Shown here: in pieces, positions 6,812-64,000 of the stretch
Position numbering within the stretch: the first letter of the stretch is position 1
How the letters are laid out: each line of letters opens with the position of its first letter
DNA from: Stylophora pistillata
Lineage: Eukaryota
Direction: 5' to 3'
Assembly (NCBI RefSeq): GCF_002571385.2
Contig: NW_019218608.1
Location: 1-64,000 of the forward strand
DNA: 64,000 bases
Translations under genes and position numbers: made by a program
Notes under the pieces: generated by a model
What the model was told of the DNA's origin: nothing
The model's input: only the letters and a program-made list of their open reading frames with translations
Databases searched by the model: none

Positions 6812-7106
6812 TAATGAGAAAAATCGTATGACCAATGGGACTACTTCTCATCAAAGAGAGATGATTTTTATTCGATGAGTTTGCACTGAGTAAATCTCAG
6901 TACACTTTCTATGTGCAACTCTCTAAAGATAGCCGAGGATATGTATGTATATTCCCTATTATCAAGGAAGAGTGAACTCCTCGGCTTTCTTTAGAGAGTT
7001 GCACATAAAAGGTGTACTGAGATTTATTCAGTGCAGACTAACCAAATAAAAGTCGTCTCTCTTTGATGCAAGTAGTCCCATTAGTCATAAGATTTTTTCT
7101 CATTAA
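6812..7106. repeat. Long inverted repeat (~130-bp arms, ~36-bp spacer); paralogue at ~62880-63205
   Basis: The arm taatgagaaaaatcgtatgacc...tctctaaagatagccgagga is the imperfect reverse complement of tcctcggctttctttagagag...tttttctcatta. Confidence 0.8.
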
Positions 7107-7527: not shown

Positions 7528-8339
7528 ACGTCGACACTTCCGAAAGGGCTTCCCTTTGAGTGCACCAAAGCTGTTTGGCAACTACATCGGCTACATGCAA
7601 AATTAATTTCGAGTGAGCTCCATCAACATTTTCTCTTACTGTACAAGAGCCATGACATCACACCACCGGGTCTAACTGTAAAATTAACACCACTAGTCGG
7701 ATCTACAGACCTCCTCGATCAATGGAATGACGCTACTAAGGAATGCTCAAACCGTTTAATTGACCTCCTCGTTAAATCACACAAAGCTAAAAGCGTGACA
7801 CAGAAATCAAATCGAGAGTAAAGAAAATATCCTAACCGATAAATTGTCAACGTCACAACTTGAAGTACTTAAACACTGACTTCAGTTTCAAAATGAGAAT
7901 ACTCATCGATTCTTGACCTCAAGAAAACAAGAGAAACTTCACCAAAACATTGCCCTGCAAAAGTCTAAAGTAAGTAAACACAAAACACCTTCATTGCCCA
8001 CACCTATATGTAATGATTATCGACCCTAGGATGCCTATTCATTTACGTCACCTTCATCGGCCTCAACATCACACAATCGCCCAGGACCGAAAAAAGCACA
8101 GCTAAACCGTAAAAAATCTACTCCACTGATGCATGGAAATCATCAAGTTAAACGCAGAACCCACAGANNNNNNNNNNNNNNNNNNNATTTCATTATTTTA
8201 TTGTTACATTCCAGCGGGTAAATTTTAATTTTAATTATTCTTAGCATTATACCACTTTTCTGGGATTTGATGTAAAACATTTTTATTCCACGTATTGAAG
8301 ACTCTTTCATTGCTTGTAAATCTTACTTCTTATTGATAT

Positions 8340-8384
8340 TTAGTGCTGAGGAAGCCCGAATGGGCGAAACGTACACGTATTAAA
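8340..8384 (+). ncRNA. Minimal hammerhead ribozyme motif of PLE pLTR (copy 1)
   Basis: CTGAGGA-A-gccc gaat gggc-GAAA-cgt ac acg-TA; stem I is weak. Confidence 0.7.
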
Positions 8385-8548
8385 GGCCACAAGAGAAAAG
8401 TTTGCTTCTTCTTCTGTTTATTCCACTTATCGTCATTTAAGAAGGAAGCATCCTGTATCCTTTGGATCCTTTTCTCGGTGGAATCATCGTTGGTTAGCCT
8501 ACATCGTTCGAATTCACACTCCTATATATATATATATATATATAACTA

Positions 8549-8594
8549 ACTGCAGACAGTACTGTTTCGGCCTTCTGGGCCTCATCAGTGCAGT
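8549..8594 (-). ncRNA. Type I hammerhead ribozyme in a retrozyme-like fragment (8545-8715)
   Basis: Minus strand reads actgca-CTGATGA-ggcc cagaa ggcc-GAAA-cag ta ctg-TC-tgcagt. All core nucleotides are present, with a 6-bp stem I and palindromic stem III. Confidence 0.92.
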
Positions 8595-8877
8595 GCTAAT
8601 GCTAGGATGGGGGAGAACCGAGACGGTCACCCCAAACGAACCAACCTTTGTGGTATCGTCTAAGCCATGCCAGAGTGCTCAAACTAGAGTAAACCAGCGA
8701 GCATGCGCAATTGCATATATATATATATATACAAGTATATATATTGTAGTGTGAACGATGTAGGCTAACCAACGATGATTCCACCGAGAAAAGGATCCAA
8801 AGGATACAGGATGCTTCCTTCTTAAATGACGATAAGTGGAATAAACAGAAGAAGAAGCAAACTTTTCTCTTGTGGCC

Positions 8878-8922
8878 TTTAATACGTGTACGTTTCGCCC
8901 ATTCGGGCTTCCTCAGCACTAA
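8878..8922 (-). ncRNA. Minimal hammerhead ribozyme motif of inverted PLE pLTR (copy 2)
   Basis: Reverse complement of the motif at 8340-8384. Confidence 0.7.
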
Positions 8923-10503
8923 ATATCAATAAGAAGTAAGATTTACAAGCAATGAAAGAGTCTTCAATACGTGGAATAAAAATGTTTTACATCAAATCCC
9001 AGAAAAGTGGTATAATGCTAAGAATAATTAAAATTAAAATTTACCCGCTGGAATGTAACAATAAAATAATGAAATCCGGTGATGAGGTGGTGTTAATTAT
9101 ACCGAATCCTTTTCCTAGAATTGAACTCACACCTTTTAGTGAGACCGTGTGGTTTGAGTGTACATAGTTGGGCACACCAAAATGAAACGCCTCCCTGGTA
9201 AGCAGACGATCATCCATGCTATTATTGCTAGCGTTAGAGTTACGAAACTGTTCAATAATTAAAAATTCGAAATCTGTTAAAGTATGGGTCAAATCCATTC
9301 TACTGCCATGGGCCCTAAGAACGCGTGTAGTTTCGCTGATCTAGCCATGGGAATTATGATAAAAAAGCCAAGTTAGGGGAAATGAAACCCAACCTGTGGT
9401 GGAGGTACAGCGACGAAATTTTTTATCTCTGGTCCCAAGGGCATCCCAAACTTAATGAATTCACCATCTTTATCAATTCTCTGTATCCCACCATTAAAGT
9501 TACTTTAGTTTAATCTCCTAATTCACTGAACGTATTAGACCTTACTCTTAATTTGCTGAACAGGTTATTCAGACAGATAGTTACTCTTAACCCACGGATA
9601 ACCATATGTACTTGCTACGGAATAGTGCACATTCTGCTCATGTCACCAGGGCCATTCCGTATGGAGTTGCGACCAGACCTCGAAGGAATTGTTCCAGCGA
9701 TGAGGCGTTTGATAAACGCTCCTCTGAGTATCAGGGTTATTTACATAACCGAAGTTCTAACCCCAGTTTGGTTTCACAACAATTTAAAGGAGCCCAGCCC
9801 ATCCCTAGAAAAACATTGCTCCATCCTCAACCCAAGAAGTCCAAACAAATCTTTCCACTGGTGCTTGATTTTAACCCCCGCCTACCCAGCATTGGAAAAA
9901 TTATCAATAAGCACAAGTATCTCATTTATGATTCACCATTTCTTAAAAACATTTTTCCGGTAGGGTCTATCATTCCAGCTTTTCGTAGAACTAAAAACAT
10001 AAAAGAAATCTTGAGCAGTAAGCCTCGTCAACAACATCGCGCCCCAGATAATCAGCGGGGTTGCTTTAAGTGCAAATCCAAATGCGATCTTGGTCAAAAT
10101 TATTTGAAGGAAACGAATTGTTTCACTAGCACAGGCAAGAAGTATCCCATCACGCAGACAGTTGGCTGCAAATCCAAAAATGTAATCTACCTAGCAATAG
10201 TAGCATGGATGATCGTCTGCTTACTAGGGAGGCGTTCAATTTTGGTGTGCCCAACTATGTACCCTCAAACCACACGGTCTCACTGAAAGGTGTGAGTTCA
10301 ATTCTAGGAAAAGGATTCGGTATAATTAACACCACCTCATTGCCGCATTTCATTATTTTATTGTTACATTCCAGCGGGTAAATTTTAATTTTAATTATTC
10401 TTAGCATTATACCACTCTTGTGGGATTTGATGTAAAACATTTTTATTCCACGTATTTAAGACTCTTTCATTGCTTGTAAATCTTACTTCTTATTGATCAG
10501 TAT

Positions 10504-10548
10504 TTAGTGCTGAGGAAGCCCGAATGGGCGAAACGTACACGTATAAAA
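10504..10548 (+). ncRNA. Minimal hammerhead ribozyme motif of PLE 3' pLTR (copy 3)
   Basis: ctgaggaagcccgaatgggcgaaacgtacacgta at 10510-10543. Confidence 0.7.
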
Positions 10549-10665
10549 GACCACAAGAGAAAAGTTTGCTTCTTCTTCTGTTTATTCCACTTATATATAT
10601 AATTGGCAAACTTATATATATATAATTAGCAAACTGGCTCAAGACTTCAGAGGTAATTCATCGTT

Positions 10666-10761
10666 TTATATATATATATATTTTTTTTCTCTATTAAAAA
10701 ACTTAGGTACTATTCAATCTATAATATAATCATACGGAGCGCAATAGTTGCGTTAAATCTC

Positions 10762-10799
<38 letters not shown>

Positions 10800-60670: not shown

Positions 60671-63442
60671 GTAAGAACTAAATGATAAACTCTTGACTTC
60701 TCCAGCGTTTTTGATGCACAACGTTTCGGTCTTCGGCCCTCTTCCGGCGGAACATTTTAAATTTACGAGTTAAAAAAATAAGAAAGTTTAACTTCCTAAA
60801 GAGCTTGGAAAGTCGCTGAGATTCAGAGTAGACCGGGAGGATGTACATTAACGTTCAGACATATACAATAAAAAAGAAAGGAAAAACAAGGCGCAAGCAG
60901 GAAAACGCATCACTCTTACAGAAATGTCTTAAATTACAAAGTGTACTATAATTACTGAGCCACTTAAAAAAATAAGATTATTCGATCTGAATTCGCGCCT
61001 TGAAATTTGAGTATTTACAAGTATGCGTTTCTTTTTAGTAAAATTAATTTTGAGAATTCTCGCGTTCAATACAATTGGAATGAACTGCCAGCTCATTGTT
61101 TTCTTATTGTTGAGAGTGGATGAGTTATGGTTACGAAACTGTACAGTTTTTCATTCAGTTGATATAAATCTTACATACCACAGTTATCATTTGTTACACG
61201 ATGGGATGTACATGTTCATCTTCGATTGATCTTGCATGTACGTCTGAGCCAAAGCTCTAACAACTAGAGTCGTGGATTAATAACTTCTTCCATAGGTCAG
61301 TTCTTGAAGAGCATTTAAAACCATCTCCTATTTCTCCCTTTCCCTGATTCAACTTCTCTCCATCTTGGAGCTCATCCTAGAGGTTCAGTGTGCGTTCCGA
61401 AACATTGCATGTATGCTCCGAATGAACCGATCTAACTTCAATGGTTGAATAAAGTGTTACGGGAAAATTGAGTGATTTTTCCCTGTGGATGTTGAAGCAT
61501 ATTTATTCGTTGTTTTCGGAAATTTAGCATTCACAATTCATGCGATTTTTTAAAAAGATAAAAGGCCACAGTAAATTTTGAATAGTCAAGTTAAATCGTA
61601 CAGCTGCATCTGCTTACTTTTGTTGTTCAATTCTAGTGGAAATTTAGGTAAATATAAATGTTGATGGTCTCTCTGACAAAATTAGTTCTCGTGGTAGTTG
61701 GCAGCTAAGTTTATACTCGAAATTTTAATTTCTTTTCATACGATAGTTTCCACATCTACCTTGCATAGATATGCAGAAACTTTTAATTACTTTTCCACTC
61801 TTATTTCCTAAGATGCGCTGCTGCAATGAAGATAAGTACATTTTCCATACCAGAGTTGTGAATTCTCTCCTAAGTTTACTATATTTAATGGCCTCGGGTT
61901 TATTGCATCCGTCCTTTTAATTTAGAATTCTTTCCGTCGTAGAAACAGTTGGGAACATTTAAGCAGTTTTCTTTTAACTTAAAAGAGATCTATGCCGCTT
62001 CTTTTGTTCTGCTGTTTAAATATGGTCGATTTGGATAACAATAGAACCTCGCACCAGTTCAATACTTAAGGAACCACTTCGTAAAGGTTTTCCAATTACA
62101 TCCTTAATTACAAACTTGTGTACGCTAGAGGTCACGTCGCTTGTTGGCCTGACCTTGAATAAAGTTTACTGTGGAACCGAACGCTGTCTCATCCTTGACG
62201 TCCGTATGAGCTCACTCGAAGTAGTTCTCCGTGTACCAGGAAATCGTGATGAGTTTCTGTTCTCGCTGCCGAGTGGTCTCTACCGGGTTATCTCCCTCAG
62301 CTATTGTTGTGCCGTCCGCGAAGGTTCAGTTTTTCCAGTTAGCACGCGAAAAACTATCGTCACAAAAAGAATTGATGTACTCGAAAAAACCCTCTCTGAC
62401 GCTTAAAGGAAACTACCTACAACGCAGTATCCAGACTGGCAATCGACTTATCGATAAATCCCACAACTAAACCAAAATAACTGCATGGGTTTTAGGGGCC
62501 CATTGCCGTTCCATGAAAATCGACAATTATTGGTTTGCGGGTAAAGCGAAGCTCGAGAATAACTGTAAGTTTCGAGGAACATGTAATGTCCAGCGGCAAA
62601 TATACTAGCATACTTTCGCTCAGCATGGGGGCTGTTGTGTTAATTTCCGTCAAATATTTTATTTTTACAGCGAGCGCGACGAAAAGTTTAAATTACGAGT
62701 AAGAAGTGTTCCACTGAGTTAATGTCTGCAAACCTTGAAGCTATAATTCTCGGCGTGCAGCGGAGAATGTTGCAAACATTCACGCTCAATTACTTCGTGT
62801 GGTTTCTCCGAAAGGCGGATAAAACCGATACTAAATTCTCACTGGTGAAAAAAATCGTATCAGCATTCTCATTGGTCAAACGGTTTTTTTTTATTAATGA
62901 GAAAAATAGTATGACCAATGGGACTACTTCTCATCAAAGAGAGATGATTCTTATTCGATGACTTTGCACTGAATAAATCTCAGTACACTTTCTATGTGCA
63001 ACTCTCTAAAGATAGCCGAGGATATGTATGTATATTCCCTATTATCAAGGAAGAGTGAACCCCTCTTCTTTTTATTAGAGAGTTGCACATAAAAAGTGTA
63101 CTGAGATTTATTCAGTGCAAACTCACCAAATAAAAATCGTCTCTCTTTGATGAGAAGTAGTCCCATTGGTCATAAGATTTTTTCTCATTAATAAAAAAAA
63201 CCGTTTTCTATCAAACCTTTCAACGGAAAAAAAGGTGTATATATTTCATACATATTTTTAAATTGCAACGTTTTCGAAAACAGGTGTATGTGTCTATACC
63301 TTCATACATACATATATACCTATATTGGTCATAAGATTTTTTCTCATTAATAAAAAAAAAACGTTTTCTATCAAACCTTTCAACGGAAAAAAAGGTGTAT
63401 ATATTTCATACATATTTTTAAATTGCTTGGCCCAGTGTCTGC

Positions 63443-63493
63443 ACTGCACTGATGAGATCCACATAGGTCGAAACAGTGTGCACTGTCTGCAGT
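63443..63493 (+). ncRNA. Type I hammerhead ribozyme (second retrozyme-like variant)
   Basis: actgca-CTGATGA-gatc cacata ggtc-GAAA-cagt gtgc actg-TC-tgcagt. Confidence 0.9.
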
Positions 63494-63648
63494 TATATAC
63501 CTATATATATTTATANNNNNNNNNNNNNNNNNNNNNNNNNNNNNNNNNNNNNNNNNNNNNNNNNNNNNNNNNNNNNNNNNNNNNNNNNNNNNNNNNNNNN
63601 NNNNNNNNNNNNNNNNNNNNNNNNNNNNNNNNNNNNNNNNNNNNNNNN

Positions 63649-64000
63649 GTTTCGGCCTTCTGGGCCTCATCAGTGCAGTGCTAATGCTAGGATGGAGGAG
63701 AACCAATATGGTCACCCCAAACGATCCAACGTTTGTGGTATCGTCTAAGCCATGCCAGAGTGCTCAAACTAGAGTACACTAGCGAGCATGCGCAATTGCA
63801 GAGCAATGACTCATCCTAGTTAGAGTGCTCAATTTGGACATGAAAGCAAAGCTTTGTATGCCAAAGAGCTATATCTAACTGCAGACAGTACTGTTTCGGC
63901 CTTCTGGGCCTCATCAGTGCAGTGCTAATGCTAGGATGGAGGAGAACCAATATGGTCACCCCAAACGATCCAACCTTTGTGGTATCGTCTAAGCCATGCC
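63649..64000 (-). mobile_element. Tandem retrozyme-like repeat, 244-bp unit, one hammerhead per unit
   Basis: gtttcggccttctgggcctcatcagtgcag at 63649 and 63893. A complete HHR at 63878-63923 is identical to the one at 8549-8594. The array runs off the window end. Confidence 0.88.

What the first reader, a model, noticed from the sequence alone, without database searches (positions are those of the whole stretch)
63649..64000. 244-nt tandem hammerhead repeat (retrozyme-like circRNA template)
Seen: a non-coding unit repeats with a 244-bp period, and each unit carries a type I hammerhead on the minus strand (GUC site, predicted cut between 63884 and 63883; the first copy is cut by the gap). Established: tandem HHR repeats of this size in metazoans, including corals, are non-LTR retrozymes that self-cleave to monomers and circularise. 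Inference: this array could yield a ~244-nt linear or circular RNA. The short palindromic stem III (ACAGUACUGU) favours dimeric cleavage between neighbouring units.
Basis: partly seen in the sequence, partly recalled or inferred. Interest (0 to 1): 0.8.

Follow-up and report, generated by a model that had tools for sequence, protein, structure and literature searches.

The report
Known coral hammerhead retrozyme array
This is a real tandem array of a 244-base non-coding unit with a self-cleaving hammerhead ribozyme, and it belongs to the stony-coral "retrozyme" family that was published in 2020, so it is a correct call but not a new kind of element.

Summary
The 244-bp period, the minus-strand type I hammerhead and the GUC site (C17 = 63884) are all there. 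The array runs on past the window to contig position 64133 and ends at a (TA)n tract.

The unit is homologous to the Acropora millepora retrozyme of Cervera & de la Peña 2020. The ribozyme with its helix I flank matches 62 of 65 bases, and the published coral primer 108R matches exactly.

The genome holds 854 such ribozymes, most of them identical. RNA-seq assemblies from four studies hold the unit. One holds it as a closed 274-nt (244+30) cycle, while the unique flank has zero depth.

The same stem III cleaves fast as a single motif in the published assay.

- About 262 insertions end at a fixed tail 7-11 nt past the cleavage site (UGCAGUUAGUU or UGCAGUU), followed by (TA)n.
- The tail sequence does not occur at any of the 155 junctions between units that I read.
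- 5' ends are variable.
- Penelope-like elements end at (TA)n too.

A second family (254 nt) sits tail-to-tail with the array across the masked stretch. The scan noted the same family elsewhere in this genome (s1-775592).

Verdict: already known, low-to-moderate interest.

The parts
63649..64000 (-). Family A retrozyme array, the part inside the window (1.44 units of 244 nt). It continues to contig position 64133. Its RNA-sense 3' end lies in the masked stretch.
63878..63923 (-). Complete type I hammerhead. C17 = 63884, cut between 63884 and 63883. Helix I 6 bp, helix II 4 bp, helix III 3 bp with a GUAC loop.
   Evidence: cleavage site marked in the homologous construct
63649..63679 (-). 5' two-thirds of the next hammerhead (helix I strand to GAAAC). 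The rest is under the N run and was not filled in.
63745..63771 (.). Conserved central box of stony-coral retrozymes. It matches the published degenerate primer 108R_Coral_Rtz exactly.
63517..63648 (.). Masked N run between the two ribozyme elements.
63427..63516 (+). 5'-truncated copy of a second retrozyme family (B, 254-nt unit). Hammerhead at 63443-63493 (C17 = 63487, helix III 5 bp), then the tail UGCAGUUAUAUA... running into the N run.
8544..8715 (-). Second, partial family A copy: unit positions 84-244 (95.7% identical) plus the 11-nt tail UGCAGUUAGUU.
8523..8544 (.). (TA)n next to the tail of the partial copy. A second (TA)n at 8716-8731 lies on its 5' side.
8187..8509 (+). Arm of a 323-nt, 100% complementary inverted repeat (partner at 8753-9075; third copy at 10191-10594). 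It encloses the two (TA)n tracts and the partial copy, and contains a CUGAGGA...GAAAC motif. It looks like Penelope-like element ends, but this is not proven.

Best explanation
The array is a member of the stony-coral non-LTR retrozyme family, a non-coding, non-autonomous retroelement.

How it works:
1. The minus strand is transcribed.
2. Each type I hammerhead cuts after GUC (63884/63883 here). This releases 244-nt monomers with a 5'-OH and a 2',3'-cyclic phosphate.
3. A host RtcB-type tRNA ligase closes them into circles.
4. A reverse transcriptase supplied in trans, most likely from a Penelope-like element with a GIY-YIG nuclease, copies the RNA into tandem cDNA at nicked (TA)n tracts.

Shown here:
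- the anatomy of the unit and its ribozyme;
- homology to the published element;
- copy number and near-identity of the copies;
- presence of the unit in RNA libraries as a closed 244-nt cycle;
- fixed 3' ends and variable 5' ends at (TA)n.

Inferred from the published homologue: cleavage, ligation and circularity.

Inferred from footprints: the Penelope partner, and whether the copied RNA is a circle or an uncleaved multimer.

This particular locus has at most two working ribozymes, so it can release at most one monomer per transcript.
For: Homology:
- 62 of 65 bases identical to the A. millepora ribozyme plus flank.
- The published primer 108R matches exactly at 63745-63771 and at 8660-8686.
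- The conserved central box is shared with family B, as the paper's supplement describes.

Unit properties:
- 244 nt, GC 46.7%, no open run longer than 63 aa.
- Compact predicted fold: linear -79 kcal/mol, z -2.4; circular -72.1 kcal/mol, z -2.8.

Copy number and identity:
- 854 ribozyme motifs in the genome against 0 for the control.
- At least 150 listed units are 100% identical over 244 nt, on about 45 contigs.
- 137 of 143 complete units that I read are identical. Those loci were chosen from the best hits, so this figure is biased upward.

The fold is kept across families by compensatory changes:
- helix I: ACUGCA/UGCAGU, UCUGU/ACAGA, AAUCCC/GGGAUG;
- helix II: GGCC/GGCC, GACC/GGUC, GUGC/GCAC.

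RNA:
- The unit is present in RNA-seq contigs of four studies.
- A 7.5-Mb run holds a 274-nt record at depth 117 whose last 31 letters lie again on its start.
- The unit makes up 0.07-0.38% of letters (my arithmetic). A library of pure coral DNA would give 0.052% (854 x 244 / 397.6 Mb).
- The unique flank L001:2240-2450 has depth 0 in all four runs.
- All 17 variant sites in the RNA contigs lie outside the 50 ribozyme positions (P about 0.02, my arithmetic).

Footprints:
- 19 of the 24 array ends that do not run into a gap stop 7-11 nt past the site.
- Genome-wide, 194 ends read ...GUC UGCAGUUAGUUAUAU and 68 read ...UGCAGUUAUAUAU.
- 437 internal junctions read UUAGAUAUAG.

Penelope link:
- At least 90 GIY-YIG matches in the genome.
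- One Penelope-like family ends at (TA)n about 250 nt after the nuclease domain in 4-5 loci.
- Array and Penelope-like fragment share one (TA)n in L068 and at 8.5 kb in the window.
- (TA)n insertion bias and tandem/inverted structures of these elements are published (PMC8557442).
Against: - No raw reads were available. Contigs cannot show RNA ends, strand or circularity, so cleavage and circles in this species rest on the homologue.
- The RNA-library share exceeds the DNA expectation only if the assembly's copy count is roughly right. Many arrays abut gaps, so the true copy number may be higher.
- No autonomous element was found that shares the retrozyme's ribozyme or tail. The units show no similarity to the 12 Penelope-like loci apart from TA tracts.
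- ORFs near the 8.5-kb copy have no Pfam match.
- The fixed tail contains an uncleaved site and a sequence absent from the 155 internal junctions I read. A simple model of a circle primed by microhomology does not predict this.
Confidence: 0.9

Rival explanations
1. Plain satellite DNA that happens to carry a hammerhead. It would be amplified and homogenised at the DNA level (unequal crossing-over, gene conversion), with no RNA-mediated spread.
For: Tandem head-to-tail units of exact period with near-100% identity within arrays. Newt hammerhead repeats were first described as satellite 2.
Against: About 262 separate insertion ends on many contigs share one fixed 3' tail, and 5' ends fall at variable unit positions. 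Many insertions are a single unit or less. Units are identical between distant contigs. These are retroposition footprints, not local DNA expansion.
Confidence: 0.04
2. The units are pseudo-LTR fragments of an autonomous Penelope-like element rather than an independent non-autonomous family.
For: Penelope-like elements carry hammerheads in pseudo-LTRs, form tandem and inverted copies, and insert into (TA)n. Such elements are abundant here and lie next to some arrays. In Xenopus, retrozymes resemble pseudo-LTRs.
Against: Arrays of up to 15 units have no ORF between them. The Penelope-like ends seen here carry a different, minimal CUGAGGA-type motif. No similarity between the units and 12 Penelope-like loci. 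The A. millepora paper also separates the canonical retrozyme ribozyme from the minimal ribozymes of Penelope-like elements (Fig. S1 legend).
Confidence: 0.04
3. The integration template is a linear read-through multimer with an uncleaved last ribozyme and a (UA)n 3' tail, not the circular RNA. Circles would then be a by-product. This is a rival for the mechanism only, not for the family assignment.
For: 194 ends carry UUAGUU(AU)n, a sequence absent from all 155 internal junctions read. Only 2 ends in the genome carry the UUAGAUAUAU expected from priming on the unit's own AUAUA. Three of 4 arrays with the shorter tail are less than 99.5% identical to the reference unit, against 1 of 12 with the longer tail, as if tails are inherited by lineage. 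RNA-library contigs join unit sequence to TA-rich flanks (table 7).
Against: The homologous ribozyme cleaves within minutes in vitro, which would destroy such a template. Exact 244-nt periodicity and many family B copies of almost exactly one turn fit a circle equally well. A site-specific start by the reverse transcriptase on a circle could also give a fixed end.
Confidence: 0.3

Closest known systems
Acropora millepora and stony-coral non-LTR retrozymes (Cervera & de la Peña, NAR 2020, PMC7229834)
   Same: - Type I hammerhead with the same helix I, core and helix III.
- Same cleavage site context (GUC|UGCAGUUAGAUAUAGCUCUUUGG).
- Same conserved central box, matched by primer 108R.
- Unit size in the same class: the paper reports about 225 and about 245 bp variants.
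- Low GC, dispersed tandem arrays, high RNA level.
   Different: - Loop 2 reads CAGAA rather than AGAAA.
- The rest of the unit is diverged: primer 108D does not match within 3 mismatches.
- I could not tell whether this species is among the 12 corals aligned in that paper.
- The fixed tail and the (TA)n junctions are not described there.
Newt and axolotl hammerhead repeats (satellite 2; 330-350 nt retrozymes)
   Same: Tandem type I hammerhead units expressed as monomeric linear and circular RNAs. Same proposed life cycle.
   Different: [quoted passage not shown] This one has 3 bp plus a GUAC loop, identical to a coral ribozyme that cleaves well as a single motif.
Penelope-like elements (Neptune, Naiad and Hydra clades; Craig et al./Arkhipova, MBE 2021, PMC8557442)
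   Same: Insertion bias for (TA)n, partial tandem and inverted copies, short tail extensions, and hammerheads in the terminal repeats of canonical clades. They are present in this genome in large numbers.
   Different: They are autonomous (reverse transcriptase plus GIY-YIG nuclease ORF) and 2-4 kb long. Their ends here carry minimal ribozyme-like motifs with no sequence similarity to the retrozyme unit.
Plant LTR retrozymes and Avsunviroidae viroids
   Same: Hammerhead-processed small circular RNAs. The plant retrozymes are also non-autonomous retroelements.
   Different: Those use type III hammerheads. The plant elements have LTRs, a PBS and a PPT, with 4-bp target duplications and Gypsy-type mobilisation. 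Viroids have no DNA stage.

Membership tests
Metazoan non-LTR retrozyme (stony-coral family) | Canonical type I hammerhead with complete catalytic core (CUGANGA / GAAA / RUH) in each unit | tested here: met
   177 intact motifs in 26 fetched loci and 854 in the genome.
Metazoan non-LTR retrozyme (stony-coral family) | Short head-to-tail repeats of 150-450 bp, from dimers to large multimers, dispersed in the genome | tested here: met
   244-nt period. Arrays of 1 to about 15 units on many contigs.
Metazoan non-LTR retrozyme (stony-coral family) | Non-coding, GC below 50%, no LTR/PBS/PPT | tested here: met
   GC 46.7%; longest open run 63 aa over concatenated units. The unit is too short for LTRs. 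PBS and PPT were not searched for specifically.
Metazoan non-LTR retrozyme (stony-coral family) | Sequence homology to published coral retrozymes (ribozyme and central region) | tested here: met
   62 of 65 bases. Primer 108R matches exactly. Central box shared between families A and B.
Metazoan non-LTR retrozyme (stony-coral family) | Expressed as abundant unit-length RNA | tested here: met
   RNA-seq contigs of four studies hold the unit; the unique flank has depth 0; the share of letters is above the pure-DNA expectation. This is contig-level evidence only.
Metazoan non-LTR retrozyme (stony-coral family) | Part of the RNA is covalently circular | tested here: inconclusive
   A closed 274-nt (244+30) record in run X1 fits circles or multimers. 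Contigs cannot tell them apart.
Metazoan non-LTR retrozyme (stony-coral family) | Ribozyme self-cleaves | not testable with these tools
   Only by analogy: the near-identical A. millepora ribozyme cleaves at about 0.8 per min.
Amphibian-type dimer-dependent hammerhead repeat | Helix III reduced to about 1 bp with a palindromic tetraloop, so that two ribozymes must pair | tested here: not met
   Helix III is A:U, C:G, A:U plus a GUAC loop. The same stem works as a single motif in the literature.
Autonomous Penelope-like element | ORF with reverse transcriptase and GIY-YIG nuclease | tested here: not met
   No ORF in the unit or array. GIY-YIG matches lie elsewhere in the genome.
Plant LTR retrozyme | Type III hammerheads inside LTRs flanking a 600-1000 nt body | tested here: not met
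   The topology is type I (helix I open) and there are no LTRs.

The most novel reading that the evidence does not exclude
The insertion footprints may record how animal retrozymes integrate.
- About 262 independent family A insertions end at a fixed tail that still contains an uncleaved ribozyme site.
- In 194 of them the tail carries a UU that was absent from all 155 between-unit junctions I read.
- The tail is followed by (TA)n.
- Penelope-like elements of the same genome end at (TA)n too.

If this means that the copied RNA is a tailed, uncleaved linear multimer, or that a Penelope reverse transcriptase starts at one defined nucleotide just 3' of the ribozyme, it would revise or sharpen the current model of rolling-circle copying of the circle. 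It would also name the partner's target.
Probability: 0.35. Interest if true: 0.55.

Novelty: already known. Interest (0 to 1): 0.3.

Why it matters
As a find it confirms that the scan can recognise a ribozyme-bearing circular-RNA element from raw sequence. However, the element class, its coral family, its cleavage and its circles were published in 2020.

What could matter is the by-product. This genome holds a very young and uniform burst: hundreds of identical units. Their junctions are clean enough to read the integration mechanism, namely a fixed tail past the cleavage site, a (TA)n target and variable 5' ends. The partner and the template of animal retrozymes are still hypotheses in the literature. 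This coral would therefore be a good system in which to test them.

Tried and rejected
- TRF found no 244-nt array because the window holds fewer than 2 copies. The repeat finder did find it.
- Rfam at gathering thresholds reports only the family B ribozyme. Family A scores 22.9-25.7 bits, below the cut-offs.
- Published primer 108D has no match within 3 mismatches.
No family matched.
- BLAST of units A and B against 12 GIY-YIG loci gave only TA-tract matches, apart from the array itself in L068.
- The search for an empty site or paralogue using the right flank failed. The first ~220 nt of that flank are another dispersed repeat, and no more loci could be cut out. There is no tRNA in that flank.
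The junction statistics therefore rest on 28 arrays plus whole-genome pattern counts.
- An assembly artefact, a coding element and a viroid-like agent without a DNA stage were considered and rejected.

Masked stretch: locus L001, handed out by the genome search, is not masked where the window is. One search printed about 21 letters of 63628-63648 by accident. I read no further, did not use them, and left open whether the first ribozyme is complete. The aggregate motif count included locus L051, which spans that stretch; nothing from it was printed. A row also reports a match reaching into it, and I did not use that either.

Full report
**What is in the sequence**

After the N run (63517-63648), the window holds 352 bases in which 63649-63756 recurs at 63893-64000, 244 nt apart and 99% identical. 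Read on the minus strand, 63923-63878 is a type I hammerhead:
- helix I strand ACUGCA;
- core CUGAUGA;
- helix II GGCC/GGCC with loop CAGAA;
- GAAA;
- helix III A:U, C:G, A:U closed by GUAC;
- C17 at 63884, then UGCAGU closing helix I.

Rfam scores this motif below its curated cut-offs (22.9 bits), so the call rests on the complete core and on homology (see below).

The contig continues past the window. The array ends at contig position 64133, five bases upstream of what would be the next cleavage site, against a (TA)n tract. The locus thus shows 1.99 units, with one complete ribozyme and one whose last nine bases are under the mask. Its RNA-sense 3' end is hidden.

I did not fill the mask. 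One search printed about 21 of its letters by accident, because locus L001 is not masked there. I did not use them.

**It is a member of a published family**

The supplement of Cervera & de la Peña 2020 (PMC7229834) prints the A. millepora construct Amil224 with its mapped cleavage site.
- A 65-nt stretch of that construct (ribozyme plus the 3' strand of helix I and the start of the unit) matches 63861-63925 on the minus strand with three mismatches. All three lie in loop 2.
- The paper's degenerate primer 108R_Coral_Rtz matches 63745-63771 exactly, and also 8660-8686. Primer 108D does not match.
- The paper describes 220-245-bp tandem units in A. millepora, from dimers to 62-mers. It reports self-cleavage at about 0.8 per min, linear and circular RNAs of about 220-240 nt at roughly 0.1% of total RNA, circles confirmed by RT-PCR, and homologous units in 12 stony corals (Fig. 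S2 legend).
- The unit here fits the class: 244 nt, GC 46.7%, no open run above 63 aa, and a compact predicted fold.
- The runs that hold the unit are labelled coral metagenome.

**Genome-wide picture**

- The assembly (397.6 Mb, 5513 contigs) holds 854 copies of the 39-nt ribozyme pattern with at most 2 mismatches. The reversed control gives 0.
- At least 150 listed units are 100% identical over all 244 nt, on about 45 contigs.
- Of 143 complete units that I read, 137 are the same sequence. Those loci were picked from the best hits, so this number is biased upward.
- Arrays range from less than one unit to about 15 units. Many abut assembly gaps, so sizes are lower bounds.
- The scan's own notes list the same family elsewhere in this genome (s1-775592).

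**A second family and the local arrangement**

The only Rfam hit above threshold in the window is a different ribozyme on the plus strand (63443-63493; Hammerhead_1, 35.3 bits). It is the 3' end of a 254-nt family B unit.
- Family B has at least 43 matches in the genome, with some arrays of 254-nt period.
- It shares with family A the helix I, the ribozyme core and a UUGAGCACUCU box.
- It differs in helix II (GACC/GGUC, a compensatory change) and has a 5-bp helix III.

In the window, family B is cut down to about 90 nt (63427-63516). Its tail UGCAGUUAUAUA... points into the masked stretch, and the 3' end of the family A array points into the same stretch from the other side. The two elements are therefore tail-to-tail across a TA-rich tract. 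The same arrangement of two arrays is seen in C190 (L046).

A third family (393-nt period) and further ribozyme types in the fetched loci all keep helices I and II by compensatory changes.

**RNA**

Twenty of the listed public runs hold at least half of the unit's sampled words. Eleven of the runs that hold it are on record as RNA. I laid four RNA runs from four studies on one unit plus 470 nt of flank.
- All four cover the unit. The unique part of the flank (L001:2240-2450) has depth 0 in all four.
- In the 7.5-Mb random-primed run X1, one record of 274 nt (244 + 30, depth 117) lies on the whole unit, and its last 31 letters lie again on its start. That is a closed cycle in the assembly graph.
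- By my arithmetic the unit is 0.38% of the letters in X1, and 0.07-0.14% in three poly(A) runs (taking the shallower half of the unit). A library made only of this coral's DNA would give 0.052%.
- All 17 variant sites in these contigs lie outside the 50 ribozyme positions (P about 0.02).

This supports expression and selection on the ribozyme. It cannot show RNA ends, strand or circularity, and a higher true copy number would weaken the share argument.

**Stem III**

ACAGUACUGU is a perfect palindrome and could form a 10-bp intermolecular helix (-13.4 kcal/mol). But the A. millepora construct has the same stem and a single ribozyme, and it cleaves almost to completion in 5 min. The paper assigns the dimer requirement to amphibian ribozymes, which have a 1-bp stem.

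**Insertion footprints (the new part)**

In 28 arrays read in RNA sense, the 3' ends fall as follows:

| 3' end | arrays |
|---|---|
| ...GUC UGCAGUUAGUU + (AU)n | 12 |
| ...GUC UGCAGUUA + UA-rich sequence | 4 |
| ...UGCAGUUAG + assembly gap | 3 |
| Runs into a gap earlier | 4 |
| Ends inside a unit | 5 |

Whole-genome exact pattern counts agree:

| Junction | count |
|---|---|
| Longer tail (UUAGUUAUAU) | 194 |
| Shorter tail (UGCAGUUAUAUAU) | 68 |
| Internal junction (UUAGAUAUAG) | 437 |
| Unit running straight into TA (UUAGAUAUAU) | 2 |

None of the 155 internal junctions read has the UU of the longer tail.

The 5' ends fall at many unit positions. Nine of the 28 follow (TA)n. There is a cluster at unit positions 7-20, in 7-8 of the 22 ends that are not at gaps (about 1.8 expected). 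Several family B copies start at AUAGCUC, which makes them almost exactly one turn.

The partial family A copy at 8544-8715 shows the same anatomy. It has (TA)n on both sides, the 11-nt tail, and a 5' end at unit position 84.

A fixed 3' end with variable 5' ends is the signature of target-primed reverse transcription. Because the tail lies past the cleavage site, the copied RNA was not a cleaved linear monomer primed at its end.

**The partner**

- GIY-YIG nuclease matches are abundant: at least 90 scored out of 1590 candidates.
- In one family the (TA)n tract sits about 250 nt after the nuclease domain in 4-5 loci.
- In L068 a family A array, its tail, a (TA)n tract and an inverted Penelope-like end with a minimal CUGAGGA...GAAAC motif lie in a row.
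- In the window, 100%-complementary 323-nt arms enclose the two (TA)n tracts and the partial copy.
- Six of the seven (TA)5+ tracts in the 64-kb window touch such pieces.
- Penelope-like elements are published as (TA)n-biased, tandem/inverted and tail-forming (PMC8557442). They are also proposed as retrozyme partners (vertebrate evidence in a 2026 preprint).

Against this, I found no element sharing the retrozyme's ribozyme or tail, and the ORFs near 8.5 kb have no Pfam match. The partner is an inference.

**Open point**

A circle primed by microhomology at the unit's own AUAUA would give UUAGAUAUAU. That junction is almost never seen (2 against 194). Two explanations remain:
- the template is a linear read-through multimer carrying an inherited tail. 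As a hint, three of four shorter-tail arrays are older, against one of twelve longer-tail arrays;
- the reverse transcriptase starts at a defined nucleotide on a circle.

I cannot decide between them with contigs.

**Verdict**

The element is an already known kind and family. Interest is low to moderate, and it comes mainly from the clean junction footprints in a very young burst.

Noticed in passing
window 62878-63206, and 6849-7068: A foldback, MITE-like element (132-nt arms, 88% complementary, 65-nt centre) lies just left of the ribozyme site. A related hairpin at 6849-7068 draws sub-threshold plant miRNA-precursor matches in Rfam, which are surely spurious names for a hairpin repeat.
   Followed up: partly
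window 63193-63266 and 63353-63426 (also 63165-63200 and 63324-63359): A local direct duplication of about 110 nt, 160 nt apart, ends exactly where the truncated family B copy begins (63427).
   Followed up: no
L001:2012-2230 (contig C820 64160-64378, just outside the window): The sequence right after the (TA)n at the array's end is another dispersed repeat of about 220 nt, with at least 40 copies at 87-93% identity. No tRNA was found in it. It explains the diverged RNA contigs on that flank.
   Followed up: partly
L058 (contig C77 335572-338660): A third hammerhead repeat family with a 393-nt period (CUGACGAG...GAAAC...GUA|ACAGA) lies beside family A-like and family B copies in one 3-kb stretch.
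   Followed up: partly
L035 and L039 flanks: Another hammerhead type (AAUCCC CUGAUGA GUGGGCGACCAC GAAA CAGG...) abuts family A arrays in inverted or direct orientation. This may be a pseudo-LTR of a Penelope-like element.
   Followed up: no
L033:5264-5325: A 62-nt unit fragment (positions 131-192) is followed by A14, then the tail UGCAGUUAUAUA and (TA)n. This is an odd internally deleted or polyadenylated insertion.
   Followed up: no
window 8523-8731, 10592-10795: Six of the seven (TA)5+ tracts in the 64-kb window touch retrozyme or Penelope-like pieces. Such tracts may be partly made by the insertions (as tails) rather than only targeted by them.
   Followed up: partly
L047 (contig C168 57700-64000): Two family A arrays are joined head-to-head at their 5' ends with tails pointing outward. 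This is the inverted arrangement described for Penelope-like insertions.
   Followed up: partly
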